A DNA stretch of 64,000 nt, taken from the IMG/VR virus record IMGVR_UViG_3300032242_003291, positions 1 through 64,000 of that record. One strand, written 5' to 3'. The number at the start of each line of letters is the position of its first letter. Position 1 is the stretch's first letter. The position numbers and the translations under genes are program-made. The notes beneath the pieces were generated by a model, which was not told the DNA's origin, did no database searches, and saw nothing but the letters and a program-made list of their open reading frames with translations. Shown in pieces: positions 6,086 through 63,551 of this stretch.

Positions 6086-6093
6086 TATAAATA
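6086..6093 (-). promoter_or_regulatory. TATTTATA promoter-like motif
   Basis: Sense-strand TATTTATA 16 nt upstream of the ATG at 6069; one of at least 15 similar sites. Confidence 0.55.
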
Positions 6094-6156
6094 CCACATT
6101 TATAATAATGTTATCCATCGTTTGTAAAAATAATTAAAACTTATTTAATTATTATT

Positions 6157-6543
6157 CTATATTACACAGGACGGGTCTGAAAAAGACAAATTATTTATAA
6201 AACAAGAAGGGTCCGTAACTACCACTCCAAAATTACAACTTGAGTTTTGAATATTAATATCAACAACACAACTTGCCATCTCAATAGTAATTTGGAATGT
6301 ACAACCAAAAGTACATTGAAGAATCTTAAATACTTGGCAATTATTAGCGTCAACCAATAAAAGCATTATTTCAGGTGCTGTTTCGAAAATTGCAGGAATT
6401 GTTGTATTGTATTCTACAACAGGTGGAACAGGACCTGGATTTATTTGTCCAAGAAAAGTTTGATGATTACCATAGACATCTGCTATGTAAACATTAATTG
6501 GGTATGTACCCCCTGATATGTCTGTAATTCTTACCTGCGTCAT
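6157..6543 (-). CDS. Small Cys-containing virion/fibre-associated protein, 128 aa
   Basis: Start revised to ATG 6543 (MTQVRITD), which overlaps the upstream TGA as ATGA. Contains a SprB-like LVDANNC motif. Confidence 0.65.
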   Translation of the reverse strand: MTQVRITDISGGTYPINVYIADVYGNHQTFLGQINPGPVPPVVEYNTTIPAIFETAPEIMLLLVDANNCQVFKILQCTFGCTFQITIEMASCVVDINIQNSSCNFGVVVTDPSCFINNLSFSDPSCVI

Positions 6544-8675
6544 GTTAAGCACATTGTATCATAAACAATTACAAGGTCAACAATAATTTCTTGTCCGTTA
6601 AGTGATGTACCACTTGCGTTTGTTTGAATTGTAATTTGATTTTCAAGTTGATTTATTGTCACATTTCCAATACCTGGTATACTCAACAACAACTGTGTTA
6701 AAGTATTATAATATAAATTATCAGATGGAGCGTCATTTAATGATGTTGATGTATAGAATGTTGCACTTGCAGTGTATCCTGCAGGTTTTACATATACGTC
6801 AATTGAAAATGTTGCAGTTATTAAGTTACAATTTGTGTTTCCTGAGGTTAAATCTACATATCCTTCATTTAACATTTGTAATAAACCATACTTAACAGGT
6901 GAATTAATATTAAACGATTCAGAGCCCATTACATATGTTTGATAGGATACATAATTAGTATTACAATTTATTGTTGTACTTCTTTGTTGTGAACACCCAT
7001 CATTATCAGTTATAATTAAATTATATGTTCCCGCAGTTAATCCTGATACTTGAATTTGTTGTGGATTTCCAATAACATTACTAGACCAATTAAATGTGAA
7101 TGGTGGATTTCCTGTAGAAATAAACGCTGTTATTGTTCCGTTATTTCCCGTACCACAAGAAGTACTATATAAAGTGTAGTTCAAAGGTTGGCTTGATGGT
7201 ATATAAACATTTGAAGTTTGTACACAACCTGATGCGTCTGTCACAGTAACAATATGAGTGCCTGAAGGTATGTTTGAAAAAGTTACTTGGTTTAATGCAC
7301 TATTTTGAATAACAAATAAACCATCAACTGAATATGTTATTGGTAATGTTGCTCCTGTAGTTGAACTTACTTGAATTTTTCCATTAGTTTGACCACAACT
7401 TGTAGGTGTAATTACTGTTGATATTGTATATTTGTTTTCTGTAATAATTGTTGTTTCTTGCATGTAAGAACAACCTGAATTATCTTGGACAACTACAGTA
7501 TACGTACCTGCGGAAAGAGATGAAAATAATTGTGTTGTTTGGGTTGTATTTACATTTTTTTGGTTTCCGTCGGGATAAATTAATGTATACATATAAGGTG
7601 TTAATCCTCCTGTGACACTAATAGTTATTGAACCGTTAGTTGTTGAACAAACTGAATTTTCACCTGTAACAACAACTTTAGAAATTCCGTTAGGTGATTG
7701 TATTGTAATACCTGCATTAAAACTACAAAGTCCCGCATCAGTAACTAAAAACCCATAAGCTCCAGCAGAAAGACCTGATAAAGACCAAACATTTGAATAT
7801 GATACTAAAATTGTTCCAGTTGACGCAGAATAATAATAAGGTGCCGTTCCTCCTGTAACTGTAAGATTAATAACACCATCACTATTGAAACATGTTGGTT
7901 GTGTACTTGTAAATCCACCTAACCCCACTGGTGGTACAGTATTTACAGTTGCTGTTTTAGATTGAACACATCCAAGAGAATCTGTTACTGTAACCGAATA
8001 TTGTCCGTTAGTTAATCCTGTTATTGCTTGAGTTGTGGCACTGTTGCTCCATAAATAAGTGTAAGGACCTTGTCCTGTTTGTCCTGTAACAAATAATTTA
8101 CCATTTGGTAGATTTGTACAGGTTGAGTTTGGAACCGCGTAAATTCCAAAGTCCATTGAATACGATTGTTCGATTATGAAGTTTTGACTTCTTCCTGAAC
8201 ACCCCCCTAAATCATAGGCAACCATATAATAGGTTCCAGCAGTTAAATGAGCAAAAACAACATTTGTTTGATTTGTTGTTGCAGATTGACTATATGTACC
8301 ATCACCAAAATATAAATAATAAATTGTGGATGAATAAACGCTTGTTGATGTTCCTGTAACAGAACCATTATTTAAAGAACAAGTTGTATTTTGAGTTGAT
8401 ACAATACTACAACAAAGTCCACTAGATACTGGTATGTTAACATACACTTCATTATTTATTGGTAAAGTACTGTCATTAATTCTAACACTATAATTACCGT
8501 ACCATAGATTAGTCTTAGTTGCTGGTGTCGTTGTTAAAATATCTGTACCTAAATTAGGTGTAATCCATTGTACAGTGTATGGTGGAATTGCACCATATGG
8601 TAAAATACTTATCCCCCCCAATCCATTTTGAGAACAATCCCCACTAACAGATAAATTATATGATATTGCAGACAT
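6540..8675 (-). CDS. SprB-repeat protein (putative tail fibre/adhesin), 711 aa
   Basis: Six repeats ending in Y/H-x-V-x-V-x-D-x-x-G-C (VAYDLGGC, VTVTDSLGC, LVTDAGLC, VVQDNSGC, VTVTDASGC, IITDNDGC), preceded by GL-x-AG-x-Y, typical of Bacteroidota SprB repeats. Confidence 0.75.
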   Translation of the reverse strand: MSAISYNLSVSGDCSQNGLGGISILPYGAIPPYTVQWITPNLGTDILTTTPATKTNLWYGNYSVRINDSTLPINNEVYVNIPVSSGLCCSIVSTQNTTCSLNNGSVTGTSTSVYSSTIYYLYFGDGTYSQSATTNQTNVVFAHLTAGTYYMVAYDLGGCSGRSQNFIIEQSYSMDFGIYAVPNSTCTNLPNGKLFVTGQTGQGPYTYLWSNSATTQAITGLTNGQYSVTVTDSLGCVQSKTATVNTVPPVGLGGFTSTQPTCFNSDGVINLTVTGGTAPYYYSASTGTILVSYSNVWSLSGLSAGAYGFLVTDAGLCSFNAGITIQSPNGISKVVVTGENSVCSTTNGSITISVTGGLTPYMYTLIYPDGNQKNVNTTQTTQLFSSLSAGTYTVVVQDNSGCSYMQETTIITENKYTISTVITPTSCGQTNGKIQVSSTTGATLPITYSVDGLFVIQNSALNQVTFSNIPSGTHIVTVTDASGCVQTSNVYIPSSQPLNYTLYSTSCGTGNNGTITAFISTGNPPFTFNWSSNVIGNPQQIQVSGLTAGTYNLIITDNDGCSQQRSTTINCNTNYVSYQTYVMGSESFNINSPVKYGLLQMLNEGYVDLTSGNTNCNLITATFSIDVYVKPAGYTASATFYTSTSLNDAPSDNLYYNTLTQLLLSIPGIGNVTINQLENQITIQTNASGTSLNGQEIIVDLVIVYDTMCLT

Positions 8676-11653
8676 TATTGATTATTACAATTTATACTTA
8701 TGTTTATCCCAACATTCAATGAAACGATATCTTTCAAGTTATTGGGTGTACAAGTTAAACTTGTTATCGTTAACGAATTACCATTAAGGAAATAAGTATA
8801 TCCATAATCATATATATTTGGTAGATATTCAATTAATGCGTTTCTCCAAGCCATATTTGTTGGTACATCAACATATCCGTATCCGCTATAAAACATTTCT
8901 TGTATAATAATATTCCCACCTATTCTTAAATCAACATACCATTCAGTTTGTGTTGAACTTTTAACACATTGGTTTAATGTTAAACCACTTGACGCTAACA
9001 TGCTATTAACCCTGTTAGCCAAAATACTATTAAAATTACTTACATCAACATCACCATTTAACCAAGGATATATGTAAAAATTAACGTACTCCGCGGCACA
9101 TGTAAAATCGAATATATTACCAATAATATAACAAGGTTCGACAGGTACTGGTATAATTTGACAACCTCTTTGTCTTCTGTAAACAAATTTTTGTTTTTGT
9201 AAGACTGAGTTTTCCATTTTAACACCTGTATTCCAAATTGTTGTTGCTGGTACCATTTGTTCAACCAACTTCATCCAATAGGGACCTAAACCATTTACGT
9301 AATCAATTAACTTTTGATATGTGTATTTGTTATTAGGTAATCCTACAGTTTGTTCTGATTCGATATACTTCCACCATATTGATTGTAATGTTGGATATCC
9401 CCCTGTTTTACCATCACTAATCCATTGTCTGTTTCTAACATTAATCATGTTCTCCCAAAATGTTTGTGAGAATTCAAAAAATGTTTTTTTCTTTGGTTCA
9501 GGATTAACGTAAGTCCAATCAAGACCACCAGGGACAGGATAACCAACAGTTAAACCTGATTCAGGTATTGGATAATCATATCTAACTGATTCATCCCATA
9601 CATCATAAACTAACCCTTGAGCTGGATTTAAGAATAAATCAACATTCTTAACGTTTAATACTAATCTTTCATCATCCACATAATAATATGCATCATAATC
9701 ACCATCAACTGAAAGTCTAATTTTATTATCTTCTTCTAACCACGACTTTTTGTTATCAACAACTTTTTGTAATTTGAATCCTTCAGTCATATAAGGGAAT
9801 TGTCTAAATCTATTCAAATAAGGCTGACCATATGTAAATGGTTGGAGTTGGGTTTGTATCGAATAATTCTGTCCTGTATATACATCTCCTGTTAATACAA
9901 CCTCATCTGGGCTTCTATGTGATGGCGTTTGTTCATACCAACCAGCACCCAATTGGAAGAAGTATGTTTCGGTGTTTACAGGTGCTTTAGGGAACCCTAA
10001 ATCATCTATAGGATAATCCGCTAATGTTATTGAAACGTCTGTGTATGTGTCTGTAGTTGTGAATGCGGTGTATGTATTACCTCTAATCTTATAAGTCGCA
10101 CCAGGTAGATAGCTTGGAGTATTTTGAACATAAGTACCTCCCGATATTTGAGCCCATTGATATGTGAATTGGTCTAAATTAATTTTTTGGTCGGCTAAAT
10201 AGATATGTTCATTATATTCAATTAATGAATCGGGTGCACCAATTAATCTTAACATAAATTCAACTGACCTTCTTGTACCTTTAGATTTGAAAAGGTATGA
10301 AGCATTCATGATTAGGTTTCTATAATATGCATAGTTAAGTTCTGTTGGTGTTAACGCTCTTGTATAACCAGGGTATGTAGGTATTGAAGTATTACCAAAT
10401 ACTGAACTTAAAAAATCTTCGTTTGTAATTGGCGAAAAATTTGAGGACCATCCTAATGTTTGTGCTAAGTTAACTAATAGTTGAGATGGTATGTCGTTCT
10501 CAGGATTGTAATTAACTGAATTCATATAAGCCAATCCATCAATAAATTGTTTAATTTGGTCAAAACTTCTACCATAAATTTGAAATATCTTTTCAACTTT
10601 TTGTCCAAGTGTATCAAATTCTTTGAGAGAATCCGTAACTAAAAATCTTGAAATTAAATTACTCTTGAATGAATCTAAATTAACCGCAATTGCTTCAAGT
10701 TGAGCTAGGTAGTCATCAAAAAGAAAAGACCTAATATCCAAATTCCAAGGGCCATCTTTCGGCCATGTAACTTGTTGATAGTCTGTGTAAAATTCACCAT
10801 TCTCAGTTTGTTGTGGGACTTGAAATACTGCAGTAAATTCGGGTTGGATTAATCTATTTAACATAAATTTTTCAACCTCGTCAAAGTCTTCAGCAAATAC
10901 TCTATCAGCAACAAAATCATTTGGTCTTATTTGAAAGTTATCGTAGATAGTTGTTGCAGTAGTACCAAATGGAGTACCTGAAACATAAAAAGCAATATAA
11001 CCTGATGATAATGTTTGAGATGGTGTAAAAGATAAAACCTTAAATATTTCACCATTAATTGCAACCGCATAGTCAAGATAGGTGTTATATAAATTTCTAT
11101 ACTTAGAAACTGTTATTTCACGTAAATTTAAATTAGTTGCAGCACTAATTGAGTAATCAATGTCAAAGGGATTGTTAATCCTATCCACATTTACTTCAAA
11201 ATAAGTTTCATCCGAAACTGAATCGTATTGGATATTAGTTGCTGTTGCACCTGTAACAAACGATAAATTTGAAAACATAATGTCCAAAGACGCTGGGAAA
11301 TAGTTGATAATTTGTGTTGCAGAAACTTGTAATCTTTTAGATAAAGAACCATACATTGAAAAGTTCAATACTTGAGATACATCGTAGTTAGGGTATACTC
11401 TAAACTGTGTTGCTAATATACTTCTACTTTCCGTTAAATTATCAATGTTCAAATCACCCAAATTAACGGGGTCTGAAAACGCACCAACATTAAATCTTCT
11501 ATCAACTTTTTCAACAACAGAAGTTGTAAAATCGAAATTACCTTGCGTAAGTCCCCCACCTTGTACAGTTTGTAAACCTACAATGTTATCTGAAAAAGTA
11601 CCAGAACCATTTCCAGGTACTGGTGGATAAAAATATTTTTTAGATGTAGCCAT
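8675..11653 (-). CDS. Baseplate wedge protein, P2 gpI-like domain, 992 aa
   Basis: LVNLAQTLGW...YLFKSKGTRRSVEFMLRLIG motif typical of Tail_P2_I-type proteins; baseplate context. Confidence 0.6.
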   Translation of the reverse strand: MATSKKYFYPPVPGNGSGTFSDNIVGLQTVQGGGLTQGNFDFTTSVVEKVDRRFNVGAFSDPVNLGDLNIDNLTESRSILATQFRVYPNYDVSQVLNFSMYGSLSKRLQVSATQIINYFPASLDIMFSNLSFVTGATATNIQYDSVSDETYFEVNVDRINNPFDIDYSISAATNLNLREITVSKYRNLYNTYLDYAVAINGEIFKVLSFTPSQTLSSGYIAFYVSGTPFGTTATTIYDNFQIRPNDFVADRVFAEDFDEVEKFMLNRLIQPEFTAVFQVPQQTENGEFYTDYQQVTWPKDGPWNLDIRSFLFDDYLAQLEAIAVNLDSFKSNLISRFLVTDSLKEFDTLGQKVEKIFQIYGRSFDQIKQFIDGLAYMNSVNYNPENDIPSQLLVNLAQTLGWSSNFSPITNEDFLSSVFGNTSIPTYPGYTRALTPTELNYAYYRNLIMNASYLFKSKGTRRSVEFMLRLIGAPDSLIEYNEHIYLADQKINLDQFTYQWAQISGGTYVQNTPSYLPGATYKIRGNTYTAFTTTDTYTDVSITLADYPIDDLGFPKAPVNTETYFFQLGAGWYEQTPSHRSPDEVVLTGDVYTGQNYSIQTQLQPFTYGQPYLNRFRQFPYMTEGFKLQKVVDNKKSWLEEDNKIRLSVDGDYDAYYYVDDERLVLNVKNVDLFLNPAQGLVYDVWDESVRYDYPIPESGLTVGYPVPGGLDWTYVNPEPKKKTFFEFSQTFWENMINVRNRQWISDGKTGGYPTLQSIWWKYIESEQTVGLPNNKYTYQKLIDYVNGLGPYWMKLVEQMVPATTIWNTGVKMENSVLQKQKFVYRRQRGCQIIPVPVEPCYIIGNIFDFTCAAEYVNFYIYPWLNGDVDVSNFNSILANRVNSMLASSGLTLNQCVKSSTQTEWYVDLRIGGNIIIQEMFYSGYGYVDVPTNMAWRNALIEYLPNIYDYGYTYFLNGNSLTITSLTCTPNNLKDIVSLNVGINISINCNNQ

Positions 11654-12561
11654 TAACTAGTTATTGTTGTGAAATTTTTACTGAAATCAATGTTATTACC
11701 TCTACTTTGTCTAACTTCATAAAGTAACGCATTAAATTGGTCTCTAATTTCGTATAAGTTATATTGTCTGTATATGTTATTTTGTGAATCGTAAATTGTG
11801 TAGATACCATCATCAATTGACTTAGTTTGATTACCGTAAAGAGCAATTGCAAGAGATGAAATATCATATTCTACCATTTCAATTTCAATTGTTACAGGAT
11901 TGAAGAAAGTATTTGTTATAATGATATTTTGGTCTGGCTGTCCAATAAAAGGAGTAGCATTTGGTTTGTTTGTTGGTGATGATGATGGTGACAAAGTTAA
12001 AAACAATAAATTAGAATCTCCGTCTACATATCTATATCTAATAGCCTTTTGTGAAGTATTAACTTCATTAGTAACCACTGGCTCACAATAAAAACAAGAA
12101 GTTACAACTCTAAAAAAATTAGGTATTTTTGTACCATCAGCATTTAGGTATTCAATCCTAAATCCAACCAATCCTTGTGGTACAAATTTATTAACATACT
12201 GTGTTGGTACATTAGCCAAATTTATAACAATACCTTTAACATTTGGTAAAGCACTTAACACTCCACAATCAGTTATTGATGTTCTTATTTGTGCTGGTCT
12301 TAAATAAAGTGTATATATACCTAACGCATTAAATTGTGTTGCGGGTAATGTTAGATTATATAATCCTCCCAAAACTTCAACACCAGCATTTCCACCTGTT
12401 TCTGAATTGTTAAAATATGGTCTTAAAATTGTTTGGGCATCTAATTTTGATAGGACAAAAGAATCGGTTACGTCTCTAGTCGCAGTATAATTCATGATAA
12501 TCTCAACATCGGCTGGACTAACATCTGAAGGTCTTATTGTACCATATGAACCTATTGCCAT
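11653..12561 (-). CDS. Hypothetical structural protein, 302 aa
   Basis: Long ORF coupled to its neighbours; TATTTAT at 12578-12584; structural cluster. Confidence 0.6.
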   Translation of the reverse strand: MAIGSYGTIRPSDVSPADVEIIMNYTATRDVTDSFVLSKLDAQTILRPYFNNSETGGNAGVEVLGGLYNLTLPATQFNALGIYTLYLRPAQIRTSITDCGVLSALPNVKGIVINLANVPTQYVNKFVPQGLVGFRIEYLNADGTKIPNFFRVVTSCFYCEPVVTNEVNTSQKAIRYRYVDGDSNLLFLTLSPSSSPTNKPNATPFIGQPDQNIIITNTFFNPVTIEIEMVEYDISSLAIALYGNQTKSIDDGIYTIYDSQNNIYRQYNLYEIRDQFNALLYEVRQSRGNNIDFSKNFTTITS

Positions 12562-12602
12562 TTGTTTTTATTTTTTAATAAATAGTTTAGTTATTTTTTT
12601 CA

Positions 12603-21396: not shown

Positions 21397-21494
21397 TAAA
21401 ATCTCTTTAACTTATAAATAGTTTATGTGTTATTTTTCAAGGTGCACACATACACATTATAAATTATAAGTCAAAGTTTTAATAAATAAATGTG

Positions 21495-23809: not shown

Positions 23810-23829
23810 ATAACATAAATATACATGGA

Positions 23830-25940: not shown

Positions 25941-26073
25941 TTTGTAAATTTTTAGGTGTAGATATTTTATTAAAAAATCGTTGATTTTTATGATAAATAT
26001 GTGGTCGAACACCAATCGACCAACATTTTCTAATTAAAAAAATAAGTTTTTTTTGAGAAAAGTAGATATTTAA

Positions 26074-31940: not shown

Positions 31941-31970
31941 AATATAGTAATAAATAAGGCGTATGTCAAA
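31941..31970 (-). promoter_or_regulatory. Host-RNAP-type (early/middle) promoter for the replication block
   Basis: TTGACA-N17-TATATT, also readable as Bacteroidota TTTG-N20-TATATTTT; 34 nt upstream of the SSB ATG. Confidence 0.6.
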
Positions 31971-32932: not shown

Positions 32933-32964
32933 AAAAAATCTTTTATTATAAATATATTGTTATG

Positions 32965-46068: not shown

Positions 46069-46104
46069 TAATTATTTTTAATATAAATAGATTATTTATA
46101 GTTT

Positions 46105-47946: not shown

Positions 47947-47972
47947 TATCAAATGTTATTTTATATAAATAC

Positions 47973-47998: not shown

Positions 47999-48143
47999 TA
48001 TTATTGCTTTCAACCCATTTATCTAATAAGTATTTTCTCATATAAACTGGCATGATAAGAAAATCACTATAAGAAACATGAAATAGGGTACTCAAATAGT
48101 AAAATTCATCTATTTGTCCTTGTCTGTAATTAGAAGAAAGGAC
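47988..48143 (-). CDS. Frameshift extension of the tail assembly chaperone (gpGT-like, 51 aa)
   Basis: Open +1 frame VLSSNYRQGQIDEFYYLSTLFHVSYSDFLIMPVYMRKYLLDKWVESNNKKD* with no upstream in-frame start; entered from TTTTTTCGT at 48150-48142. Confidence 0.7.
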   Translation of the reverse strand, partial: VLSSNYRQGQIDEFYYLSTLFHVSYSDFLIMPVYMRKYLLDKWVESNNKKD

Positions 48144-48875: not shown

Positions 48876-48913
48876 AAAAAAAAATAACCGTAAGGGTTAT
48901 GTCCTTACGGTTA
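48876..48913 (-). terminator. Rho-independent terminator after the tail tube gene
   Basis: TAACCGTAAGG-ACATAAC-CCTTACGGTTA followed by nine T. Confidence 0.85.
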
Positions 48914-49435: not shown

Positions 49436-49526
49436 ATTATTAAATTTTTGTTTCTTTGTTTATATCATATAAATATAGTGTGTTGAAAAATTTTTCTCTT
49501 TACTTTATTAATTAAAAGGAATATTC

Positions 49527-50365: not shown

Positions 50366-50394
50366 AAAAATAGGGGGGGATTAACCCCCCATTT
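50366..50394 (-). terminator. Rho-independent terminator after the sheath gene
   Basis: GGGGGG-TTAAT-CCCCCC(C)TATTTTT on the minus strand. Confidence 0.7.
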
Positions 50395-50396
50395 TA

Positions 50397-53606: not shown

Positions 53607-53640
53607 TATTAATTAATTCTTGTGCAGATTTATTTTAATG

Positions 53641-53647
53641 ATAAATA
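53641..53647 (-). promoter_or_regulatory. TATTTAT promoter-like motif for the sheath gene
   Basis: 34 nt upstream of ATG 53606. Confidence 0.55.
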
Positions 53648-55433: not shown

Positions 55434-55434
55434 A

Positions 55435-55465
55435 TTGATAAATACTTTAATTATAACTATATTTA
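55435..55465 (+). promoter_or_regulatory. Candidate Bacteroidota-type promoter for the SNF2 gene
   Basis: TTG-N20-TATATTTA, overlapping the divergent TATTTAT site; weak in such AT-rich DNA. Confidence 0.35.
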
Positions 55466-55486
55466 ACTCAAATATTTTTTCCATCG

Positions 55487-57238
55487 ATGGAAGTATCAAT
55501 AGAATCAAAGTCGTTAACATTATTAGAAACCTATGAAGGGGGAAACAACTACCTTTTAGAGTTGAAGAGAAAATCTCAACTCAATAAGAAGTTTTACCCA
55601 ACAAGGAGTCAAGCGGAATACATAATTAACAACCACGACAAACAACCAAAGGTTGCAAAAAAGTGGGTTGTTCTTGATGCATATTTTGCTCAAAAACTTG
55701 CGGATGATAGATTACTCACGGTTATCCCTGAAAAGGTATGGGTGGAAAAACTATTGGCTGAAAAGGAAAAGGCATTTCATATTTGGGGTAAGATAAATGA
55801 AAACCAAGAGCTTCACGATTTTTGGTTACCCAAGGCGTCAATCATAAAAGATAATACAGTTAAAGACGTGGTTATCAATTATGAAAAATATTCTAAACGT
55901 CCCCCATTAACACATCAAAAAGAAGCGGTACAAAAACTTGTTGAGAATAAAAAGTTTATCTTGGCTGATGATATGGGTCTTGGTAAAACTACATCAACTA
56001 TAATTGCTGCTCTCGAAACAGGTGCGAAGAAAATCTTAATTATCTGTCCCGCTACTCTGAAGATTAATTGGAAAAGGGAGATTGAAAATTACTCAGAAAG
56101 ACCAATCTTTATTGCAGAAGGAAAACAATTCTCAACTGAACACGATTTTGTTATTATAAACTACGACATTATAAAAAATTTCCATGACCCTAAAAAGAAA
56201 GATGAATCGCAAATTCTTGCTTCCAATTTTGATTTGGTTGTTATTGATGAAGCACACTATATCAAAAATGCTCAAGCCCAACGTACAAAACTAATCAACG
56301 ATATTGTAAAGAAAGTTGACCGTTTATGGTTACTGACTGGAACTCCCATGACTTCCCGTCCAATTGATTATTATAACCTTTTAAGCCTAATTGATTCGCC
56401 TGTTGCCAAAAACTGGATGGCTTATGTTATAAGATATTGCCAAGGATACCAATTCAAAGTTGGTCCAAGAAAAGTGTGGAATGTTATGGGAGCATCCAAT
56501 TTGGAAGAGCTTAGGGATAGGACCGTAGGACTTACCCTCAGAAGGTTGAAAGAAGACGTTTTAGACCTTCCAGATAAAATTATTACACCAGTGTACCTAA
56601 GACTAAAGTCCAACGAGTATGAGGAGGTAATGGGTGAATATTACAATTGGTATGAAAAGAATCCTGAAGAATCTAAATCACTTACAGTTCAATTCACAAA
56701 ACTAACAAAGGTTAGACAAATCATTGCCGATGAGAAGATTGCTCAAACAATAGAACTTGCTGAGAATATCATAGAACAAGGTAAGAAGGTAATCATCTTT
56801 TGCAACTTTACAGATTCACTTAATAAAATTTGTGAACACTTTGGAAAAAGTGCGGTTAAAGTTGATGGTTCAATGTCTAAACCTGAAAGACAAAATAGTG
56901 TTGACGGATTCCAAGAAAACGAAAAGATTAAAGTTTTTGTTGGAAACATAAAGGCCGCTGGTGTTGGTTTAACATTAACTGCTGGTGAAGCGGTTATTAT
57001 GAATGACCTATCATTTTTACCGTCAGACCACTCACAAGCAGAAGACCGAGCTTATAGATACGGTCAAAAAAATAACGTACTAGTTTATTACCCCATCTTT
57101 GAAAATACAATCGAAGGAGTCATCTACGACATACTTGCAAATAAAAAACAAGTTATCTCAACAGTCTTAGGTGATAACCAAAACACAGTCGACGCAGCAG
57201 AGGAAATATTAAAAAGAATCCACGAATTGCGTCGTTAA
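55487..57238 (+). CDS. SNF2-family (HARP/SMARCAL1-like) helicase/translocase, 583 aa
   Basis: LADDMGLGKT, DEAH, LTGTP, QAEDRAYRYGQ motifs. Confidence 0.9.
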   Translation: MEVSIESKSLTLLETYEGGNNYLLELKRKSQLNKKFYPTRSQAEYIINNHDKQPKVAKKWVVLDAYFAQKLADDRLLTVIPEKVWVEKLLAEKEKAFHIWGKINENQELHDFWLPKASIIKDNTVKDVVINYEKYSKRPPLTHQKEAVQKLVENKKFILADDMGLGKTTSTIIAALETGAKKILIICPATLKINWKREIENYSERPIFIAEGKQFSTEHDFVIINYDIIKNFHDPKKKDESQILASNFDLVVIDEAHYIKNAQAQRTKLINDIVKKVDRLWLLTGTPMTSRPIDYYNLLSLIDSPVAKNWMAYVIRYCQGYQFKVGPRKVWNVMGASNLEELRDRTVGLTLRRLKEDVLDLPDKIITPVYLRLKSNEYEEVMGEYYNWYEKNPEESKSLTVQFTKLTKVRQIIADEKIAQTIELAENIIEQGKKVIIFCNFTDSLNKICEHFGKSAVKVDGSMSKPERQNSVDGFQENEKIKVFVGNIKAAGVGLTLTAGEAVIMNDLSFLPSDHSQAEDRAYRYGQKNNVLVYYPIFENTIEGVIYDILANKKQVISTVLGDNQNTVDAAEEILKRIHELRR

Positions 57239-57280
57239 AACAATATTGGATTATTTATATGAAATGGATAATCCTAAACT

Positions 57281-58819
57281 ATGAAGAAAGTAGAAGAAAA
57301 AATCCAACAACTCGAAACACAAATACACGAAAACCACGTTAACAGAGAAACAGAGTTGTTGATTACAGAAATGAAGAAAATAGGAATAGAAAAGTTACCT
57401 TATTCTTACTCAGCCCTCAAACAGTTCATTGACTCCGAAACGATGAACTTTCATTATAACAAACATTATAAAGGGTACGTGGACAAATTAAATGATGCAC
57501 TCTCAAAAAAGAAATACGGAGATTTAGAGTTAGAACAAATCATTAAGAACATAAGTCGTTACGACAAAACAATCAGAAACAACGCAGGTGGAGCATTCAA
57601 TCACGCATTGTTTTGGAACATGTTGACTCCAACACCAAAGAAACTCGAAGGGGAACTTTACAAGAAAATCACAAAACAATTTGGAAGTCTTACCGCATTT
57701 AAAAAGAAATTTGATGCAGTTGCCAAAGACAGATTTGGTTCAGGTTGGGTGTGGTTGGTACTAACAGCAAAGAATACTTTGAAGATTATGTCAACACCAA
57801 ACCAAGACAATCCATTAATGAATGTGATAGAAGGTGGGGGTTTTCCTTTATTAGGTTTAGACCTTTGGGAACATGCTTACTATCTAAAATATAGAAACAA
57901 AAGAGATGAATATATTTTAAACTTTTGGAAAGTTGTGAATTGGGATTTTGTTTCCAAATTATATGAAATGAGAACTGAAACAAAATTAACAGAATCTTTA
58001 GAATTGAGTGGTTTAATTACTGAGTCTGTTGATACTAAGTTTTGTGATGCAAAAGAAGTCCTTTTCTACAAAGATTTAATCAATAACCCAAAGATAAAAA
58101 GAATTTATCAAGATGGTATTACTAGTGTATTGAAAAAAGTATTTCACCAATTTTGGGTGGATAGTACAAACAAAGAGATGTCAGGGTTTTATGGTGTTGA
58201 ATCTAAAGAAGGAAGGTCATTATTAAATAATCTAAATACAAATTTTAACGCATTTTGTTTATTAGGTAAGGCGGTTAATAGACAGATTGAAAAGATTGGT
58301 CGACAAGATAAGATGTTTGATTTCAGTAAGTCTGAAAATAGAACAGTCAAAGAAGTATCAAGATTTATTAATGCGTTAGACCACTTCAAAACAGATATTT
58401 TTACAAAACACAATGAAGATTTTATTAATATCATTAAGGTACTGAAAAAATTATGGGACAGAGGACAAAAGTCAGAGGACAATGTTTTGAAAAAAGTGGA
58501 AGATTATTTTGAAGGTAGAGCTAAAATTGAAAAGGTTGGTGGTCACGGACAAAAAGTGGATGCATTCAAAGGAGTTGATTTGATTATCAGTGTTGATGGT
58601 AAAACTCACACGGCACAAGTTAAACCGTATTCAATGACTAAAGTTGACGGAACTAATGTAGAACTATATGATACAGGGAATGTAAAACCATATAATGTTG
58701 ATTGGTTAATTTTTATACAAACAAAAACTAACAAGATATTAATATTTAACAACGACCCAATTAGTAGTGAAAATCAATACGTATTTAAGTTAAATTCACT
58801 TAAGCACGAAATAGAATAA
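57281..58819 (+). CDS. sod: Fe/Mn superoxide dismutase fused to a C-terminal PD-(D/E)xK-like domain, 512 aa
   Basis: All four ligands present (FHYNKH, NHALFW, DLWEHAYY), GG and PNQD typical of Mn/cambialistic enzymes; ~280 extra C-terminal residues with DAFKGVD...QVKP. Confidence 0.85.
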   Translation: MKKVEEKIQQLETQIHENHVNRETELLITEMKKIGIEKLPYSYSALKQFIDSETMNFHYNKHYKGYVDKLNDALSKKKYGDLELEQIIKNISRYDKTIRNNAGGAFNHALFWNMLTPTPKKLEGELYKKITKQFGSLTAFKKKFDAVAKDRFGSGWVWLVLTAKNTLKIMSTPNQDNPLMNVIEGGGFPLLGLDLWEHAYYLKYRNKRDEYILNFWKVVNWDFVSKLYEMRTETKLTESLELSGLITESVDTKFCDAKEVLFYKDLINNPKIKRIYQDGITSVLKKVFHQFWVDSTNKEMSGFYGVESKEGRSLLNNLNTNFNAFCLLGKAVNRQIEKIGRQDKMFDFSKSENRTVKEVSRFINALDHFKTDIFTKHNEDFINIIKVLKKLWDRGQKSEDNVLKKVEDYFEGRAKIEKVGGHGQKVDAFKGVDLIISVDGKTHTAQVKPYSMTKVDGTNVELYDTGNVKPYNVDWLIFIQTKTNKILIFNNDPISSENQYVFKLNSLKHEIE

Positions 58820-58837
58820 TAAAGATATTTATTTGAT

Positions 58838-59965
58838 ATGTCAGTAATACCAGAACCAGAAAGGTCAAAAATTTATACAAGAGTCAAGCACCAATTGGGT
58901 GCACCTTTAAGAAGTGTTGAACTTGAAGATGAAATGTTAGATTCATTGATGGAATTATCTATTCAAGACTACGAAGAGTATGTTTTACAGTGGTTAATTG
59001 ATAGTCAATGGGTTAACCTTGTCAATCTGAACATGAGTGAAAAATCTGTTGCTCAAGCACTTATAACAAGAACAATGGATTTTGAACAGCAATTTGCATA
59101 CTCATATTCGAAAATTGCTGGTCTTCAAACTACGGGTCCATGGGTTTTAAAGAAAGATTATTTCACATTAGAAAAAAATGTTCAGACATATGAAATTCCT
59201 GCTGGTAGAGAAGTTAATGAATTGTTATGGTTCTCTGACCAACCTTGGACTGCGTATGGTCTTGGGGGTGTCGGTGGTTTTGGATTCGGTGGAATAGGAT
59301 TAGGTGCAGACCAAGCGGGATACGCTCAAATGGGTAATCAAGGTTCTTATTTTATGATGTCAGGTTTCGATTACTTAATAAGAATGCAAGAAGCCAATGT
59401 ACTTAGTAGAATTTTAGGAGGGTCAATGACATACAGAATTACAGGATTACCTGATGGTAAAAAGTTAATTCACTTAATGAATACACCTGGAGGTAAATTT
59501 AATTGGTCAATGTATAATCAATATGTTGGTAAAGCTGTTTGGTATTGGTATTATGAAACAACACCTGACAGTAGAGCGGATTGTTTGAAAAATAATCCCG
59601 ACGTTATCAAACTTCCAACTGACGTTCCATTAGAAGAGTTAACATGGGAGAACTTGAACACCCCTGGTAAACAATGGGTCAGAAGATGGTTTACCGCATA
59701 TGCTAAAGAAACTTTATCAAGAGTTAGAGGTAAATTCAGTGGTAATCTTAAAACACCTGATTCGGAATTAACTATGGATTATACGAGTTTATCGACAGAA
59801 GCTAAAGACGAAAAATCTAAACTTCTTGAAGAATTAATAGGTGCTGAAGGTTGGTTAACAAGGTTAAGACCTGAAAAGGTTATGGAAAGAGAAGCACAAA
59901 TTGCAGAAAACCTAAATAAACAAATGAAGTTCAGAGCAATGCCTCGTCAAATTTATGTAATATAA
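58838..59965 (+). CDS. Neck / head-tail adaptor protein (T4 gp13-like), 375 aa
   Basis: KHQLGAP...VELEDE, WVRRWFTAYAKETLSRVRGKF motifs; TATTTAT 5 nt upstream. Confidence 0.7.
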   Translation: MSVIPEPERSKIYTRVKHQLGAPLRSVELEDEMLDSLMELSIQDYEEYVLQWLIDSQWVNLVNLNMSEKSVAQALITRTMDFEQQFAYSYSKIAGLQTTGPWVLKKDYFTLEKNVQTYEIPAGREVNELLWFSDQPWTAYGLGGVGGFGFGGIGLGADQAGYAQMGNQGSYFMMSGFDYLIRMQEANVLSRILGGSMTYRITGLPDGKKLIHLMNTPGGKFNWSMYNQYVGKAVWYWYYETTPDSRADCLKNNPDVIKLPTDVPLEELTWENLNTPGKQWVRRWFTAYAKETLSRVRGKFSGNLKTPDSELTMDYTSLSTEAKDEKSKLLEELIGAEGWLTRLRPEKVMEREAQIAENLNKQMKFRAMPRQIYVI

Positions 59966-60300
59966 TGGCAATAGTTAAAACAGTACCAGCAAGAAAATAT
60001 ATCAGTGGACAATTAGTAGAAACATCTGAAATAACATTAGTTTCAGAATTAGATTATCGTACAAACGGTGAGGACTGTTGTATTGTTCGTGGTATGAGAG
60101 AAACATACGTCACGTTGGATTCAAAAACAACTGACCACATTACCGTAAAGGCAATGAATCATCTAATAGTTAGACCAGACGTTGGTAAAATTGATGAAGA
60201 GTGGGATGAAATAGTTGCCGACAAGTTTGCCTGTATCGAATTCAGATTTGTGGGTGGTAACTGGTATATCTTATCTTCAGACGGTTTGAAGCAATCCTAA
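59965..60300 (+). CDS. Small beta-rich hypothetical (probably virion) protein, 111 aa
   Basis: Coupled to the neck gene; ends in IEFRFVGGNWYILS. Confidence 0.55.
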   Translation: MAIVKTVPARKYISGQLVETSEITLVSELDYRTNGEDCCIVRGMRETYVTLDSKTTDHITVKAMNHLIVRPDVGKIDEEWDEIVADKFACIEFRFVGGNWYILSSDGLKQS

Positions 60301-63066
60301 TTTATCTTCCCAACCTTCTTCTGCTAAATCGTACATATAGTCTGATTTAAGTCCTCTCTTTTCCCAATATCGTAATTCAGCTTCTGTTATATCCATAACA
60401 TCTTTCTGTAAATCATCTTGGTCACCTTCACCTAAAGGATGTCCATTAATTAATTCACATTGTGCTGTTGTAAAGATGCCTCTTTGTTCAGGGTCCGCAA
60501 CAATCAAAGCATTTCTTACCTCATCTTGAAATACAACCATAAGAGGTTCGATTCTTTTATTGAAGGTTGCAATAGCTCTTGGAACATTATAATCCCCTGT
60601 TAAGGTAGGGTCTTTGTCCAAGATATCTTTGTCTAACATATAACAATTAATCATTACACCATCTGTGATAGGTTTAGCTTTAGGATTGTTATGTAGATTA
60701 ACCGCGTTAGTATCTTTGATTTGTTTTGCAGTCATTTTTTGAACGTCTCCCTGAGATGCTTTAGTTCCATTATTAACGTACATAATTACATCACCTAAAT
60801 TTACAGTAAGGTTTTCTTGTAATGCTAACTCCATGTGAGCCATTCTACTCATACTGTTACCTGCTTTTGTTTTGGTGGTTAGTCTTTTCTTATATTCGTC
60901 AAGACTTAATTTGACTTTAGCTCTTTGTGCAATTTTACTCAATGGTATTTTCTTGTCGAATATAATTTGAAGATACTCGTAATAGTATTCAATAAATGCC
61001 TTACCATTTCCCTCCAATAACATCTTGATACCTTTATCCAAGAATTCTTCAATATAAAGCGGAAGTTTTTTAGACTTGATAGAATTGCCAGTCAACTTTA
61101 TCTTTCCTTTGGCATCCATAACCGCGTAATTTTTTCTGGCAAGATTTATACATGAAGGCCATACCCCATCGGTATCAAGTGCCATCTCACCTCTCATAAA
61201 GATATCATTATACTCCGCAACATCAGCTTCAGGCCCGTAATATTCTTTACCCAATTTTACCTTCCAATTCAATCCACGACCAACATAAACTCGGTCTTTT
61301 GCTTCAGGCGGGGTTGAGAAGTTTACACCATCCGTATCCATTACTAACGGAACATACCCTTTAGTCATAAAGAACTTAATCATCTGACGAAGATACTGTC
61401 TACCTGTACAAGTAATTTGTTCACCCATATACATGTCACCCCACGCATAAACCTGAGGAGCTGACAACGCACCAAACATTGAGTTGATGAAAATCTTAAT
61501 TGGTAATTGTTTATTACCATATGTTGCAGACTTCTTAGGGTCACTAACATAGTATTGTTCTGCAAGTTCTTTGTATTTGATACGGGTGTTACGGAAATAA
61601 CTTAACATTCCTTTCATTGCACCTGTTACATCACAGTCGGGGAATACATCGTGAACCAATTGGATTGATGGATATAGTGAACTAAAGTCCAACTTAAGTA
61701 CATCTTTTGAATATCCAACTTTGAGTAATCTTGATAATCCTCCTACGAAATCTGTCTTGTCTTGTTTTGCGGGTATTGCTAATCCGTGTTTGTAAGACCA
61801 AGCCAACATCAACATCTTCCATAATGTTGCGGTACCCATTGTAGATACCCTCTCGTATGTTGTCGGAATCATTGCGGCAAGTAAGAATGAACCTTGATTA
61901 AATTCTTTATCTACCTTTAGAGTTTCATCTAAGTCATCGTCAAGATATCTCTCAACAATGTTGTCACCTGTCGTTTTTATGTATACACCAGGGAACTTAA
62001 TATCCAAGTCTTGGAATTCAGTTGCCTTCTTATATTTTCCATTTTGGATGTTTAACCAATATTCTTCTTTGTTGGTATACATTTTACCAATACTCTCGTG
62101 TTCGATATATACACGGTCAGGAGCTTCAGCGTTGATATACTTTGTAATGTACTTCAAACCTGCGGCTTTGATACTTGAATTGATTGCTTGTGCTCTACGA
62201 ACAGCGTGAATAATATCGATAACGTTATAACCCCAAATTGAAGTCTGAATATAATCTTCGACTTCATTTGCAAGTTTTAATATTGTTTCTTTTCTTGTGA
62301 ACGAGTGTTGGGGATGTAATGAATGACAAGCCTTCTTTGGGTCAACACCTAATATTCTACATCTTTCAAATATCCAATGCCAGTCGAAGTTTGCGGAGTT
62401 GTATCCACCAATAATACTTGGTTTGATTTCATCAATCACTTTGAAGAATTCAATGATGGCATTCTTCTCCTGAGACTCATCTATACACTCAATTACTCGG
62501 TGGTACCCTTTATTCGTTTTGATTCCAATCATGAAAATACGACCATCCTTAGGGTCAAGAGCAGTCGTTTCTAAGTCGAATACAAGTCTGGTAACTTGCT
62601 CATAGTCTTCAAAACCTTTGAATAATCTTTTTTCTTTTGAAATTAAGTATTGTTCTACAGGAGGTAGAATCATTATTTTGTCTTTGGATTTTTCACCCCA
62701 AGGGTCACAACCACCATCTCTGAAGAATTGAATAAGTTCTCTATATCCTTTAAGAGATTTAACAATATAAGTTAAACCTTTCTCAAGTCTTTCATTACCC
62801 TTTGTATCAAGTTTTTCAATCATGATACCATATTTGGACATTGCTTCTTTTTGTGCTGCTTTGGAGTCGCTATAAAATTTTAATCCTCGTAAGTCACCTA
62901 CCCAAGCAAATGGGATAAATGTATCCTTACGGATTTCTTTACCTTTGCCAGGTATTTCTTTGATTTTGTAAATTGAATTGGATGCGTAGTCGAACTCGAT
63001 TGCGACTATAAATTCTTCAGGGTCATTACCATGTAAGAATGATTCTATCTCTTCATTAGATATCAT
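60277..63066 (-). CDS. Family B DNA polymerase with 3'-5' exonuclease, 929 aa
   Basis: Exo I FDLETT, Exo II GYNSANFD, Exo III YLDDD; motif A DFSSLYPS, motif B KIFINSMFG, motif C DTDG. Confidence 0.92.
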   Translation of the reverse strand: MISNEEIESFLHGNDPEEFIVAIEFDYASNSIYKIKEIPGKGKEIRKDTFIPFAWVGDLRGLKFYSDSKAAQKEAMSKYGIMIEKLDTKGNERLEKGLTYIVKSLKGYRELIQFFRDGGCDPWGEKSKDKIMILPPVEQYLISKEKRLFKGFEDYEQVTRLVFDLETTALDPKDGRIFMIGIKTNKGYHRVIECIDESQEKNAIIEFFKVIDEIKPSIIGGYNSANFDWHWIFERCRILGVDPKKACHSLHPQHSFTRKETILKLANEVEDYIQTSIWGYNVIDIIHAVRRAQAINSSIKAAGLKYITKYINAEAPDRVYIEHESIGKMYTNKEEYWLNIQNGKYKKATEFQDLDIKFPGVYIKTTGDNIVERYLDDDLDETLKVDKEFNQGSFLLAAMIPTTYERVSTMGTATLWKMLMLAWSYKHGLAIPAKQDKTDFVGGLSRLLKVGYSKDVLKLDFSSLYPSIQLVHDVFPDCDVTGAMKGMLSYFRNTRIKYKELAEQYYVSDPKKSATYGNKQLPIKIFINSMFGALSAPQVYAWGDMYMGEQITCTGRQYLRQMIKFFMTKGYVPLVMDTDGVNFSTPPEAKDRVYVGRGLNWKVKLGKEYYGPEADVAEYNDIFMRGEMALDTDGVWPSCINLARKNYAVMDAKGKIKLTGNSIKSKKLPLYIEEFLDKGIKMLLEGNGKAFIEYYYEYLQIIFDKKIPLSKIAQRAKVKLSLDEYKKRLTTKTKAGNSMSRMAHMELALQENLTVNLGDVIMYVNNGTKASQGDVQKMTAKQIKDTNAVNLHNNPKAKPITDGVMINCYMLDKDILDKDPTLTGDYNVPRAIATFNKRIEPLMVVFQDEVRNALIVADPEQRGIFTTAQCELINGHPLGEGDQDDLQKDVMDITEAELRYWEKRGLKSDYMYDLAEEGWEDKLGLLQTV

Positions 63067-63157
63067 AAAATATATTTTTAGATTGGTGTATTAGCTTTCA
63101 CAATACGTGAAATTTACCTTCTTCTATAAATATAAAAAATCTTACTAACTAATCAAA

Positions 63158-63535
63158 TTAACAACAAGCAGTTTCAGAAATAAAACTATCTTGGATATTG
63201 ATATAAAGCTCCTCTCTAATTGGTAATATTAAATTACCCTCATCGTTTTTAATTAAAAACTGACCTTGGTATCTACCCACGGTGTCTGTATCGTATTTTG
63301 TAAACTTAAAATAAATGTAATATTCAGGTGACGCTCCTTCAGGTAAAATTAAATTAACAATTTCACATGGGGCAGAAACAATCTTAGGAATACCCGTTTC
63401 TACATCAACCATAGAAAAATAAATTGATGATACTTCTAATGATTGCATCAGTTCAAGATACCCAGCTCTACCATCTTTTACTACCTGCATTTTCAACACA
63501 GGGAGTGTTGCATTTTTTTTGATAAAAAATTCCAT
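63158..63535 (-). CDS. BppU-N-like small structural protein, 125 aa
   Basis: MEFFIKKNATLPVLKMQ...GRYQGQFLI pattern. Start revised to ATG 63535, 4 nt after TATTTAT (63540-63546). Confidence 0.5.
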   Translation of the reverse strand: MEFFIKKNATLPVLKMQVVKDGRAGYLELMQSLEVSSIYFSMVDVETGIPKIVSAPCEIVNLILPEGASPEYYIYFKFTKYDTDTVGRYQGQFLIKNDEGNLILPIREELYINIQDSFISETACC

Positions 63536-63551
63536 AACAATAAATATATTG

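What the first reader, a model, noticed from the sequence alone, without database searches (positions are those of the whole stretch)
6086..63546. Recurrent sense-strand TATTTAT motif: candidate late promoter, the reverse complement of T4 TATAAATA
Seen: TATTTAT(A) on the coding strand upstream of at least 15 starts on both strands: 6086, 12578, 21413, 23815, 25993, 32947, 46082, 47964, 49468, 53641, 55438, 63125 and 63540 (minus); 57252 and 58826 (plus). Gaps to ATG run from 4 to 58 nt. It flips with gene orientation. Known: the T4 gp55 late promoter is TATAAATA, and the Bacteroidota -7 element is TAnnTTTG, to which (TA)TATTTAT aligns with G>A. Inference: a single-element promoter read by a phage sigma or RNAP. 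It also precedes nrdJ, sod and the polymerase. Caveat: the DNA is AT-rich and a few antisense copies exist (4084, 31999, 46093).
Basis: partly seen in the sequence, partly recalled or inferred. Interest (0 to 1): 0.6.

Follow-up and report, generated by a model that had tools for sequence, protein, structure and literature searches.

The report
Phage-specific single-element promoter TATTTAT
A seven-base word, TATTTAT, marks the start of about half the transcription units of a 317-kb uncultured phage of Bacteroidota; it behaves like a stand-alone promoter, probably read by a phage-encoded sigma factor, and often sits so close to the start codon that the mRNA should have no leader.

Summary
All 15 listed copies exist and two sense copies were missed (21482, 31950). 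TATTTAT is not enriched in the window as a whole (35 copies against 36 expected). However, 17 of the 35 lie sense-oriented in about 2 kb of intergenic DNA, against 1.9 expected. In the whole 317-kb genome, 121 sense intergenic copies are found against 20.7±4.6 in shuffles. In co-directional gaps the count is 85 sense to 15 antisense.

The word is strict, with no -33/-35 partner, and it marks operon starts rather than every start codon. In relatives with divergent flanks, 196 of 197 orthologous upstream regions keep it.

Gaps to the ATG peak at 4-5 nt (35 genes, implying leaderless mRNA) and at 14-16 nt. A-rich positions 5-6 nt downstream mark the likely start.

A separate class of classical Bacteroidota promoters (TTTG-N19/20-TAnnTTTG) lies elsewhere in the genome, so there are two promoter classes.

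No phage RNA polymerase was detected. Two phage sigma factors were: an RpoD-like one behind a host-type promoter, and a divergent one closer to T4 gp55.

The best reading is a phage-sigma-dependent -10-type promoter serving middle and late genes, not late genes only. No RNA data exist, so start sites and the reading factor are inferred.

The parts
6087..6093 (-). TATTTAT, 17 nt before the ATG of gene 4111-6069 (652 aa, unknown function)
12578..12584 (-). TATTTAT, 16 nt before the ATG of gene 11653-12561
21414..21420 (-). TATTTAT, 17 nt before the ATG of the giant gene 16210-21396 (1728 aa). A second sense copy lies at 21482-21488.
23815..23821 (-). TATTTAT, 5 nt before the ATG of the gp25-like baseplate wedge gene 23339-23809 (leaderless class)
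25993..25999 (-). TATTTAT, 52 nt before ATG 25940 of the class II ribonucleotide reductase gene
31950..31956 (-).
32948..32954 (-). TATTTAT, 15 nt before gene 32708-32932
46083..46089 (-). TATTTAT, 14 nt before the giant gene 41035-46068 (1677 aa). Kept in 24 of 24 distinct orthologous upstream regions.
47965..47971 (-). TATTTAT, 18 nt before gene 46105-47946. It sits directly behind a terminator-like hairpin at 47973-47998 and is kept in 10 of 10 orthologous upstream regions.
49469..49475 (-). TATTTAT, 33 nt before the gp19-like tail tube gene 48947-49435. Kept in 43 of 43 orthologous upstream regions although the leader length varies from 32 to 44 nt.
53641..53647 (-). TATTTAT, 34 nt before the tail sheath gene 50397-53606. 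Invariant in 53 of 53 distinct orthologous upstream regions, while the 13 nt upstream of it vary freely.
55438..55444 (-). TATTTAT, 4 nt before ATG 55433, the likely true start of gene 54921-55433 (leaderless class)
57252..57258 (+). TATTTAT, 22 nt before the Fe/Mn superoxide dismutase fusion gene 57281-58819. Kept in 26 of 26 orthologous upstream regions.
58826..58832 (+). TATTTAT, 5 nt before the ATG of gene 58838-59965 (leaderless class). Kept in 25 of 25 orthologous upstream regions, always at a gap of 4 or 5 nt.
63126..63132 (-). TATTTAT, 59 nt before the family B DNA polymerase gene 60277-63066. Kept in 12 of 13 orthologous upstream regions.
63540..63546 (-). TATTTAT, 4 nt before the ATG of gene 63158-63535 (leaderless class)

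Best explanation
TATTTAT is the sole sequence element of a phage-specific promoter class. It acts as a -10/-7-type box on the non-template strand, in the register T-12 A-11 T-10 T-9 T-8 A-7 T-6. Transcription would start at an A 5-6 nt downstream. Where the word lies 4-5 nt from the ATG, the mRNA would therefore be leaderless. Elsewhere the leader would be short and A-rich, about 9-11 nt in the main class. The element is probably read by host core RNA polymerase carrying a phage-encoded sigma factor. Host sigma-A would first transcribe the genes behind classical Bacteroidota promoters (TTTG-N19/20-TAnnTTTG), which include the RpoD-like phage sigma. A phage sigma would then redirect the polymerase to TATTTAT units, which cover both replication and virion genes. 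There are two candidate readers. One is the RpoD-like sigma (G000 277416-278213, minus strand). The other is a divergent, gp55-like two-domain sigma (G000 92371-93153, plus strand). I slightly favour the gp55-like one because the promoter has no upstream element. Shown here: enrichment, strandedness, strictness, position at operon starts, conservation in relatives, the second promoter class, and the two sigma genes. Inferred: promoter function, the start site, the reading factor and the timing.
For: 1. Enrichment and strand bias.
2. Single element: there is no information outside the 7-mer except not-T at -1 and A at +11 to +13, and no TTTG at -33.
3. Strictness: no one-mismatch variant exceeds 18 sense copies except T-rich words that are also common antisense.
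4. It marks operon starts. Only 3 of 138 genes packed within 11 nt of the upstream gene have it within 40 nt, against 63 of 165 with larger gaps. Of 121 sites, 21 have a terminator-like hairpin within 60 nt upstream, against 8 of 500 random positions.
5. Conservation: 196 of 197 distinct upstream regions of eight motif-bearing genes in relatives (sheath 77-99% amino-acid identity) keep the exact word while flanks diverge. None of 138 distinct upstream regions of four motif-less genes have it.
6. Geometry: gaps to the ATG peak at 4-5 nt (35 genes) and 14-16 nt (27 genes). In 69 leadered sites, A reaches 0.68-0.75 at the 5th to 7th nt after the word, which is where the A of the ATG falls in the 4-5 nt class. 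In Flavobacterium johnsoniae the -7 box lies 4-5 nt from the start site (PMC6847099).
7. Second class: TAnnTTTG occurs 87 times sense and 19 antisense, and 34 of the 87 have TTTG 19-20 nt upstream. TATTTAT sites have none.
8. Sigma factors. The RpoD-like one has regions 1.2, 2 and 4 and lies behind a TATCTTTG promoter. For the divergent one, the family profile's best PDB hits are SigA (E 0.004) and T4 gp55 (E 0.087). In addition, 32 of 81 family members hit Pfam Sigma70_r2. Its AlphaFold model (pLDDT 88.8) superposes on sigma domain 2 with Z 9.6 and rmsd 2.5 Å over 91 of 91 residues, and also on full-length sigmas. By hhalign it matches gp55 at E 1.5e-4 but the phage's own RpoD-like sigma only at E 0.39.
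9. A more distant clade carrying both sigmas (32% and 38% identity) uses a shifted word, CTATTTA[AC], at 20 sense to 1 antisense.
Against: No transcript data exist. All 20 sequencing runs holding this DNA are DNA runs kept as contigs, so no start site is mapped. In this clade the gp55-like sigma gene lies in a long operon whose only recognisable promoter is itself TATTTAT, and no conserved host-type promoter is seen within 1.5 kb upstream in 77 relatives. Both sigmas have a sigma-4-like domain, yet no -35-type element exists. No gp45-type clamp was found. The relatives are orthologous loci, not independent samples. Gene starts come from a simple ORF caller that takes the first ATG. The fold and profile matches of the divergent sigma are individually modest (Foldseek E at least 0.06; hhalign probability 51%).
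Confidence: 0.62

Rival explanations
1. The word is a promoter element, but it is read by the host holoenzyme. The host sigma-A or a host alternative sigma would recognise it, possibly after remodelling by a small phage protein, as in T4 MotA/AsiA or Thermus phage P23-45 gp39/gp76. The phage sigmas would serve other purposes.
For: The TA at the presumed -12/-11, the T at -8 and -6, and the 4-5 nt spacing all fit the Bacteroidota -7 box geometry. The RpoD-like phage sigma may simply back up host sigma-A on the many consensus host-type promoters.
Against: The nearly invariant T-7 and G-5 of the host box are replaced, and there is no -33 element. The word is far stricter than host -7 boxes. It shifts to CTATTTA[AC] in a clade whose phage sigmas are only 32-38% identical. 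That is expected if a phage protein reads it.
Confidence: 0.15
2. The word is read by an unrecognised phage RNA polymerase, for example one of the three giant ORFs acting like the crAss-type gp66 enzyme.
For: ORFs of 2584, 1728 and 1677 aa have no detectable relatives of known function. Strict, short, single-element promoters are typical of phage polymerases.
Against: No beta-prime match (PF00623). No T7-type match either (PF00940), but that search rang in none of the 14 control genomes, so it shows nothing. The giant genes sit among tail and baseplate genes and are themselves behind TATTTAT. The genome has the hallmarks of polymerase-less 'group 2' jumbo phages, which carry sigma factors instead (PMC7824862).
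Confidence: 0.07
3. The word acts on RNA. It would be a translation-initiation enhancer or an RNA-processing site in an SD-less host, rather than a promoter.
For: It lies close to start codons, at 4-18 nt in 74 genes. Bacteroidota mRNAs lack Shine-Dalgarno sequences (PMC6847099).
Against: It is almost absent before tightly packed operon-internal genes (3 of 138). The spacing is bimodal with a tail beyond 60 nt. It often follows terminator hairpins. It is kept at leader lengths varying from 32 to 44 nt in orthologues.
Confidence: 0.08
4. It is a by-product of AT-rich intergenic composition with no function.
For: The whole-window count equals the shuffle expectation, and the DNA is 67% A+T.
Against: There is roughly six-fold excess over dinucleotide shuffles of the intergenic DNA itself, with the antisense count at chance. 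It ranks first among composition-matched permutations. It is conserved in 196 of 197 orthologous sites.
Confidence: 0.02

Closest known systems
T4 late promoters (TATAAATA, read by gp55 with gp33 and the gp45 clamp)
   Same: A single short, strict, AT-only box in the -10 region with no -35 element. The phage has T4-like structural and replication modules: gp18, gp19, gp25, gp6-like, gp32-like and PolB. It also encodes a divergent sigma whose closest specific match is gp55.
   Different: The sequence differs (TATTTAT), and the T4 word is not enriched on the sense strand. The element also drives replication genes, so it is not late-only. The candidate sigma is 260 aa with a sigma-4-like C-terminal domain, whereas gp55 is 185 aa without one. 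No gp45-type clamp was detected, and gp33 was not sought.
Bacteroidota sigma-A promoters (-33 TTTG / -7 TAnnTTTG)
   Same: The TA would fall at -12/-11 and T at -8 and -6, and the 4-5 nt distance to the presumed start matches. The same genome carries 87 sense copies of the true host-type box.
   Different: Position -7 is A instead of T, G-5 is lost, and there is no -33 element. The two classes sit before different genes, and the window has no intergenic host-type box at all.
Sigma cascades of large phages (for example Bacillus phage SPO1 gp28, then gp33/34; from general knowledge)
   Same: An early, host-promoter-driven phage sigma gene and a second phage sigma gene behind a phage-type promoter.
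   Different: SPO1 middle and late promoters are bipartite. Here only one phage-specific word was found, and no third motif emerged among the 60 unassigned upstream regions.
Poxvirus late promoters (TAAATG; from general knowledge)
   Same: The promoter core abuts or overlaps the start codon, so the coding sequence begins at or next to the start site.
   Different: An unrelated polymerase and kingdom. This is an analogy only.

Membership tests
T4-type late promoter | A single -10-region element with no -35 element | tested here: met
   The position matrix of 123 sites shows no information upstream of -1, and there is no TTTG peak.
T4-type late promoter | Consensus TATAAATA on the non-template strand | tested here: not met
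   The sense word is TATTTAT. ATAAATA on the sense strand occurs 15-16 times against about 15 expected.
T4-type late promoter | A gp55-family sigma is encoded | tested here: inconclusive
   Against gp55, the divergent sigma's family profile gives hhalign E 1.5e-4 with probability 51%, and HMM against PDB chain 7d7c_F gives E 0.087. It clearly has the sigma-70 region 2 fold.
T4-type late promoter | A gp45 sliding clamp (with gp33) acts as activator | tested here: not met
   PF09116 and PF02916 found nothing in the genome. A divergent clamp is not excluded, and gp33 was not tested.
T4-type late promoter | Restricted to late (virion) genes | tested here: not met
   It also precedes PolB, NrdJ, the gp32-like SSB and the SOD fusion.
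Bacteroidota sigma-A promoter | A -7 box TAnnTTTG with near-invariant T-7 and G-5 | tested here: not met
   In TATTTAT the corresponding positions are A and an unconstrained base.
Bacteroidota sigma-A promoter | A -33 TTTG about 19-20 nt upstream | tested here: not met
   At most 3 sites per position have it among TATTTAT sites, against 34 of 87 for the genome's own TAnnTTTG sites.
Bacteroidota sigma-A promoter | A start site 4-5 nt downstream of the box | not testable with these tools
   No RNA runs were found. The indirect evidence is the 4-5 nt gap to the ATG and the A-rich positions +11 to +13.
Canonical sigma-70 promoter (TTGACA/TATAAT, or extended -10 TGn) | Bipartite consensus or a TG extension | tested here: not met
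   The consensus scan found 76 sites against 81.4 expected, and there is no TG at -3/-2.
Translation-initiation signal | Present before most start codons, including operon-internal ones, at one fixed spacing | tested here: not met
   Only 3 of 138 tightly packed genes have it, and the spacing is bimodal with a long tail.
Phage RNA-polymerase promoter | A phage-encoded RNA polymerase is present | tested here: inconclusive
   No PF00623 hit was found. PF00940 also gave none, but that search rang in none of the control genomes and shows nothing. Three giant ORFs remain unassigned.

The most novel reading that the evidence does not exclude
The 260-aa divergent sigma belongs to a large family (1099 clusters at 50% identity) with no tblastn match in the 50,697 deposited phage records searched. 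It may be a gp55-like factor that has kept or fused a flap-binding sigma-4-like domain. If so, it could read a 7-bp box alone, without a -35 element or a clamp, and it would start about a third of its transcripts on the A of the start codon. Its specificity would drift between clades (TATTTAT against CTATTTA[AC]). That would give a natural series of orthogonal single-box sigma/promoter pairs for Bacteroidota, together with a phage that relies heavily on leaderless translation in a phylum where host mRNAs are mostly leadered.
Probability: 0.3. Interest if true: 0.72.

Novelty: new variant of a known kind. Interest (0 to 1): 0.6.

Why it matters
Promoters of Bacteroidota phages are almost unmapped. 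I found no paper in the held library that describes this word as a phage promoter. The phage belongs to a very abundant group in freshwater and lake metagenomes, with more than 580 related IMG/VR loci and thousands of protein relatives. A strict 7-bp box that partitions the genome into host-read and phage-read units gives three things:

- an immediate way to annotate operons and correct start codons in these genomes (for example ATG 55433);
- a testable sigma-promoter pair for a phylum with few genetic tools;
- a case of widespread predicted leaderless mRNAs in a phylum whose own transcripts are mostly leadered (PMC6847099).

Tried and rejected
- RNA evidence: the look-up of sequencing runs returned 20 DNA runs kept as contigs and no RNA run. 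Read laying was therefore not used, because contigs cannot show transcript ends.
- The canonical sigma-70 consensus is not enriched.
- Upstream partner elements: there is no TTTG peak, and no shared k-mer in the 50 nt upstream. The AAGTAAAG block shared by the sheath and tube promoters does not recur elsewhere.
- Third motif: the 60 upstream regions with neither word gave no convincing common motif. TATATTTA not followed by T occurs only 3 times sense and once antisense.
- The T4-orientation word ATAAATA is not enriched.
- A T4 gp55 protein search of the genome found nothing. BLASTP of gp55 against the divergent sigma gave only a 38-residue match.
- gp45 clamp families found nothing.
- RNA polymerase families found nothing.
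- The giant ORFs have no Pfam, PHROG or named Atlas relatives. Phmmer against the PDB gave only a marginal CBS-domain hit (E 0.02) for the 1728-aa ORF.
- Megablast of a 5-kb stretch of the window, and tblastn of the divergent sigma, found no match among deposited phage records.
- The genome-contig scan with the RpoD-like sigma gave only one mis-binned 3-kb contig and one distant hit, so I could not compare it with a Bacteroidota sigma-A.
- Promoter logic did not resolve which sigma reads the word, because the two clades disagree. The gp55-like gene lies behind host-type boxes in the distant clade but behind TATTTAT here.
- A GC-rich contig with a 38%-identical sigma showed a possible AAACGAC upstream word. 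This rests on a handful of sites and I did not pursue it.
Full report
**What the window is.** The window is the first 64 kb of a 317,259-bp virus record that CheckV rates as 100% complete. It has 33% G+C. It carries T4-like virion and replication genes:
- tail sheath, gp19-like tube, gp25-like wedge, baseplate J, and a collagen-like fibre;
- a gp32-like single-strand-binding protein, family B DNA polymerase, a DnaB-like helicase, class II ribonucleotide reductase, and an SNF2 helicase.

SprB repeats and the many Bacteroidota-type promoters described below point to a Bacteroidota host. No close relative exists among deposited phage genomes. However, hundreds of related contigs occur in IMG/VR, and the runs that hold this DNA are mostly freshwater, lake or aquatic metagenomes.

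**The observation.** As a raw count the word is not enriched in the window (35 against 36.2 expected). The signal lies in where the copies are and which way they point.
- I called genes with a simple ORF and codon-usage method (365 genes).
- In the window, 17 copies are sense-oriented in about 2.1 kb of intergenic DNA, 3 are antisense intergenic and 15 are in coding DNA. Dinucleotide shuffles of the intergenic regions give 1.9±1.4 sense copies.
- In the whole genome there are 121 sense intergenic copies against 20.7±4.6, while the antisense count (16) is at expectation.
- In gaps between co-directional genes, where orientation is unambiguous, the ratio is 85 to 15. Convergent gaps hold none.
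- Without any prior, TATTTAT is the most sense-biased 7-mer. It is also first among the 21 permutations of its own composition.

**Anatomy.** Aligning 123 sites shows no information outside the seven bases. The exceptions are avoidance of T just upstream and A-richness 5-7 nt downstream.
- One-mismatch variants are barely used.
- There is no upstream partner: no TTTG peak and no shared k-mer.
- The word marks operon starts. Among genes packed within 11 nt of their upstream neighbour, 3 of 138 have it. Among genes with larger gaps, 63 of 165 do.
- Seventeen per cent of sites follow a terminator-like hairpin within 60 nt, against 1.6% of random positions. In the window this is seen at 47973-47998.
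- Of 187 genes with an upstream gap of at least 25 nt, 93 have TATTTAT, 45 have a host-type box (11 have both) and 60 have neither.

**Spacing.** The distance from the word to the first ATG is sharply bimodal. Thirty-five genes have 4 or 5 nt and 27 have 14-16 nt, with a tail beyond 60 nt.
- In the 69 sites with longer leaders, A reaches 0.68-0.75 at the 5th to 7th positions after the word. That is where the A of the ATG falls in the 4-5 nt class.
- In Flavobacterium johnsoniae the -7 box lies 4-5 nt from the transcription start, and 87% of predicted transcripts have leaders longer than 10 nt (PMC6847099).
- The simplest reading is a start on an A 5-6 nt after the word, in the register T-12 A-11 T T T-8 A-7 T-6. 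About a third of these units would then give leaderless mRNAs.
- This spacing also corrects one start in the window, to ATG 55433 instead of 55520.
- All of this is inference. No RNA run holding this phage was found.

**Conservation.** Eighty related loci (sheath 77-99% amino-acid identity) were compared.
- For eight window genes that carry the word, 196 of 197 distinct orthologous upstream sequences keep the exact 7-mer at similar spacing.
- For four genes without it, none of 138 does.
- Before the sheath gene the word is invariant while the 13 nt upstream of it change freely.
- These loci are orthologous, so this shows purifying selection on the word, not independent origins.

**A second promoter class.** The genome also holds 87 sense copies (19 antisense) of TAnnTTTG, the Bacteroidota -7 box. 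Thirty-four of them have TTTG 19-20 nt upstream, which is the classical bipartite promoter.
- These precede many small ORFs, a primase gene, tRNA genes and the operon of the RpoD-like sigma.
- None lies in an intergenic region of the window.
- TATTTAT precedes both virion genes (sheath, tube, wedge, portal, fibres) and replication or nucleotide-metabolism genes. It is therefore a phage-specific class rather than a strictly late one.

**Who reads it.** No beta-prime or T7-type polymerase was detected, although the T7-type search also failed in every control genome and so shows nothing. Two sigma factors are encoded, and both are core genes of the group.
- The first (265 aa) has regions 1.2, 2 and 4 and resembles primary sigmas. 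It lies in an operon behind a host-type TATCTTTG box.
- The second (260 aa) has no PHROG family and only a marginal Pfam hit by itself.
  - It belongs to a family of 1099 clusters at 50% identity.
  - The family profile's best PDB hits are sigma factors, including T4 gp55.
  - 32 of 81 members hit Pfam Sigma70_r2.
  - Its model (pLDDT 88.8) superposes on sigma domain 2 (Z 9.6, rmsd 2.5 Å, 91 of 91 residues) and on whole sigmas including domain 4.
  - It is nearer to gp55 (hhalign E 1.5e-4) than to the phage's own RpoD-like sigma (E 0.39).
  - It has no tblastn match in deposited phage genomes.
- This pair of an RpoD-like and a minimal or divergent sigma matches what was described for polymerase-less 'group 2' jumbo phages (PMC7824862).

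Which sigma reads TATTTAT is not settled. The lack of a -35-type element and the gp55 likeness favour the second. Its position here, in an operon whose only visible promoter is TATTTAT, favours the first. In a more distant clade the second sigma lies downstream of host-type boxes.

**A shifted word in a distant clade.** A 134-kb contig (29% G+C) carries homologues of both sigmas at 32% and 38% identity. Its top sense-biased 7-mer is CTATTTA (20 to 1), followed by A or C, while TATTTAT itself is not enriched there (7 to 4). The core TATTTA is shared, but the specificity-adding base moves from the 3' to the 5' side. That is what one expects if a diverging phage protein, rather than the conserved host sigma, reads the box.

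**Comparison with known systems.** The element works like a T4 late promoter, as a lone, strict AT box in the -10 region. It is not a member of that class:
- the sequence differs;
- the T4 word is not enriched in the sense orientation;
- it is not late-only;
- no gp45-type clamp was found.

It is not a host sigma-A promoter either, because T-7, G-5 and the -33 element are missing.

**Verdict.** This is a real, conserved, phage-specific promoter-like element in a new variant of a known scheme, in which phage sigmas redirect the host polymerase. It has an unusual, well-supported geometry that predicts many leaderless mRNAs. Function, start sites and the reading sigma remain to be shown experimentally.

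Noticed in passing
G000 131607-138851 (outside the window), plus 159655-159740 and 242893-242965: There are twenty tRNA genes, eighteen of them in one minus-strand cluster. Several lie directly behind consensus host-type TATCTTTG promoters.
   Followed up: partly
G000 185.7-186.5 kb, 218.5-220.2 kb and 242.6-243.3 kb (outside the window): These ORF-poor stretches carry several near-consensus TTTG-N19-TATCTTTG promoters with similar downstream sequences. They may drive small RNAs or very small ORFs.
   Followed up: no
window 50373-50390: A G6/C6 hairpin lies between the sheath gene and the next gene (49527-50357). It is kept in relatives with different stem sequences and often lacks a T-run. 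It may be a partial terminator or an RNA-stabilising hairpin within a sheath operon.
   Followed up: partly
window 48885-48913 (-): An 11-bp hairpin followed by nine T lies immediately before the ATG of gene 48130-48873 and is conserved in relatives. In relatives a TATTTAT or TATTTAC sits about 60 nt upstream and TATATTTAA flanks the stem. It looks like a leader attenuator.
   Followed up: no
window 54921-55520 (-): The longest ORF starts at 55520. The arrangement TATTTAT-CAAT-ATG suggests the real start is ATG 55433 (170 aa), which leaves a true divergent promoter region with the SNF2 helicase gene.
   Followed up: yes
window 32965-40719, 16210-21396 and 41035-46068 (all -): These three giant ORFs (2584, 1728 and 1677 aa) have no informative Pfam, PHROG or PDB-sequence match (only a marginal CBS-domain hit, E 0.02, for the 1728-aa ORF). 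The 2584-aa ORF, the only one sent to the Atlas, has no named Atlas relative. Two of them (16210-21396 and 41035-46068) lie directly behind TATTTAT.
   Followed up: partly
window 3-4073 (-) and 292-2952 (+): A collagen-repeat tail fibre (Pfam Collagen, E 1.6e-140) lies on the minus strand. The long plus-strand ORF over it is a shadow frame of the GC-rich Gly-X-Y repeats, which also explains the 40-47% G+C of the first 4 kb.
   Followed up: yes
window 57281-58819 (+): The Fe/Mn superoxide dismutase domains occupy only residues 36-226 of a 512-aa protein. The C-terminal half is unassigned.
   Followed up: no
L186-L188 (ENA scaffolds, 53% G+C, next to a BACON-domain gene): A 38%-identical homologue of the divergent sigma sits in a GC-rich phage. 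Its upstream regions repeatedly show AAACGAC-like words instead of TATTTAT, alongside host-type TAnnTTTG boxes.
   Followed up: no
G000, genes with TAnnTTTG 4-7 nt before the ATG (for example 120559-121398, 207147-207956, 249836-250615): Fifteen host-type boxes also lie 4-7 nt from the start codon. Leaderless or near-leaderless mRNAs are therefore predicted for both promoter classes of this phage.
   Followed up: partly
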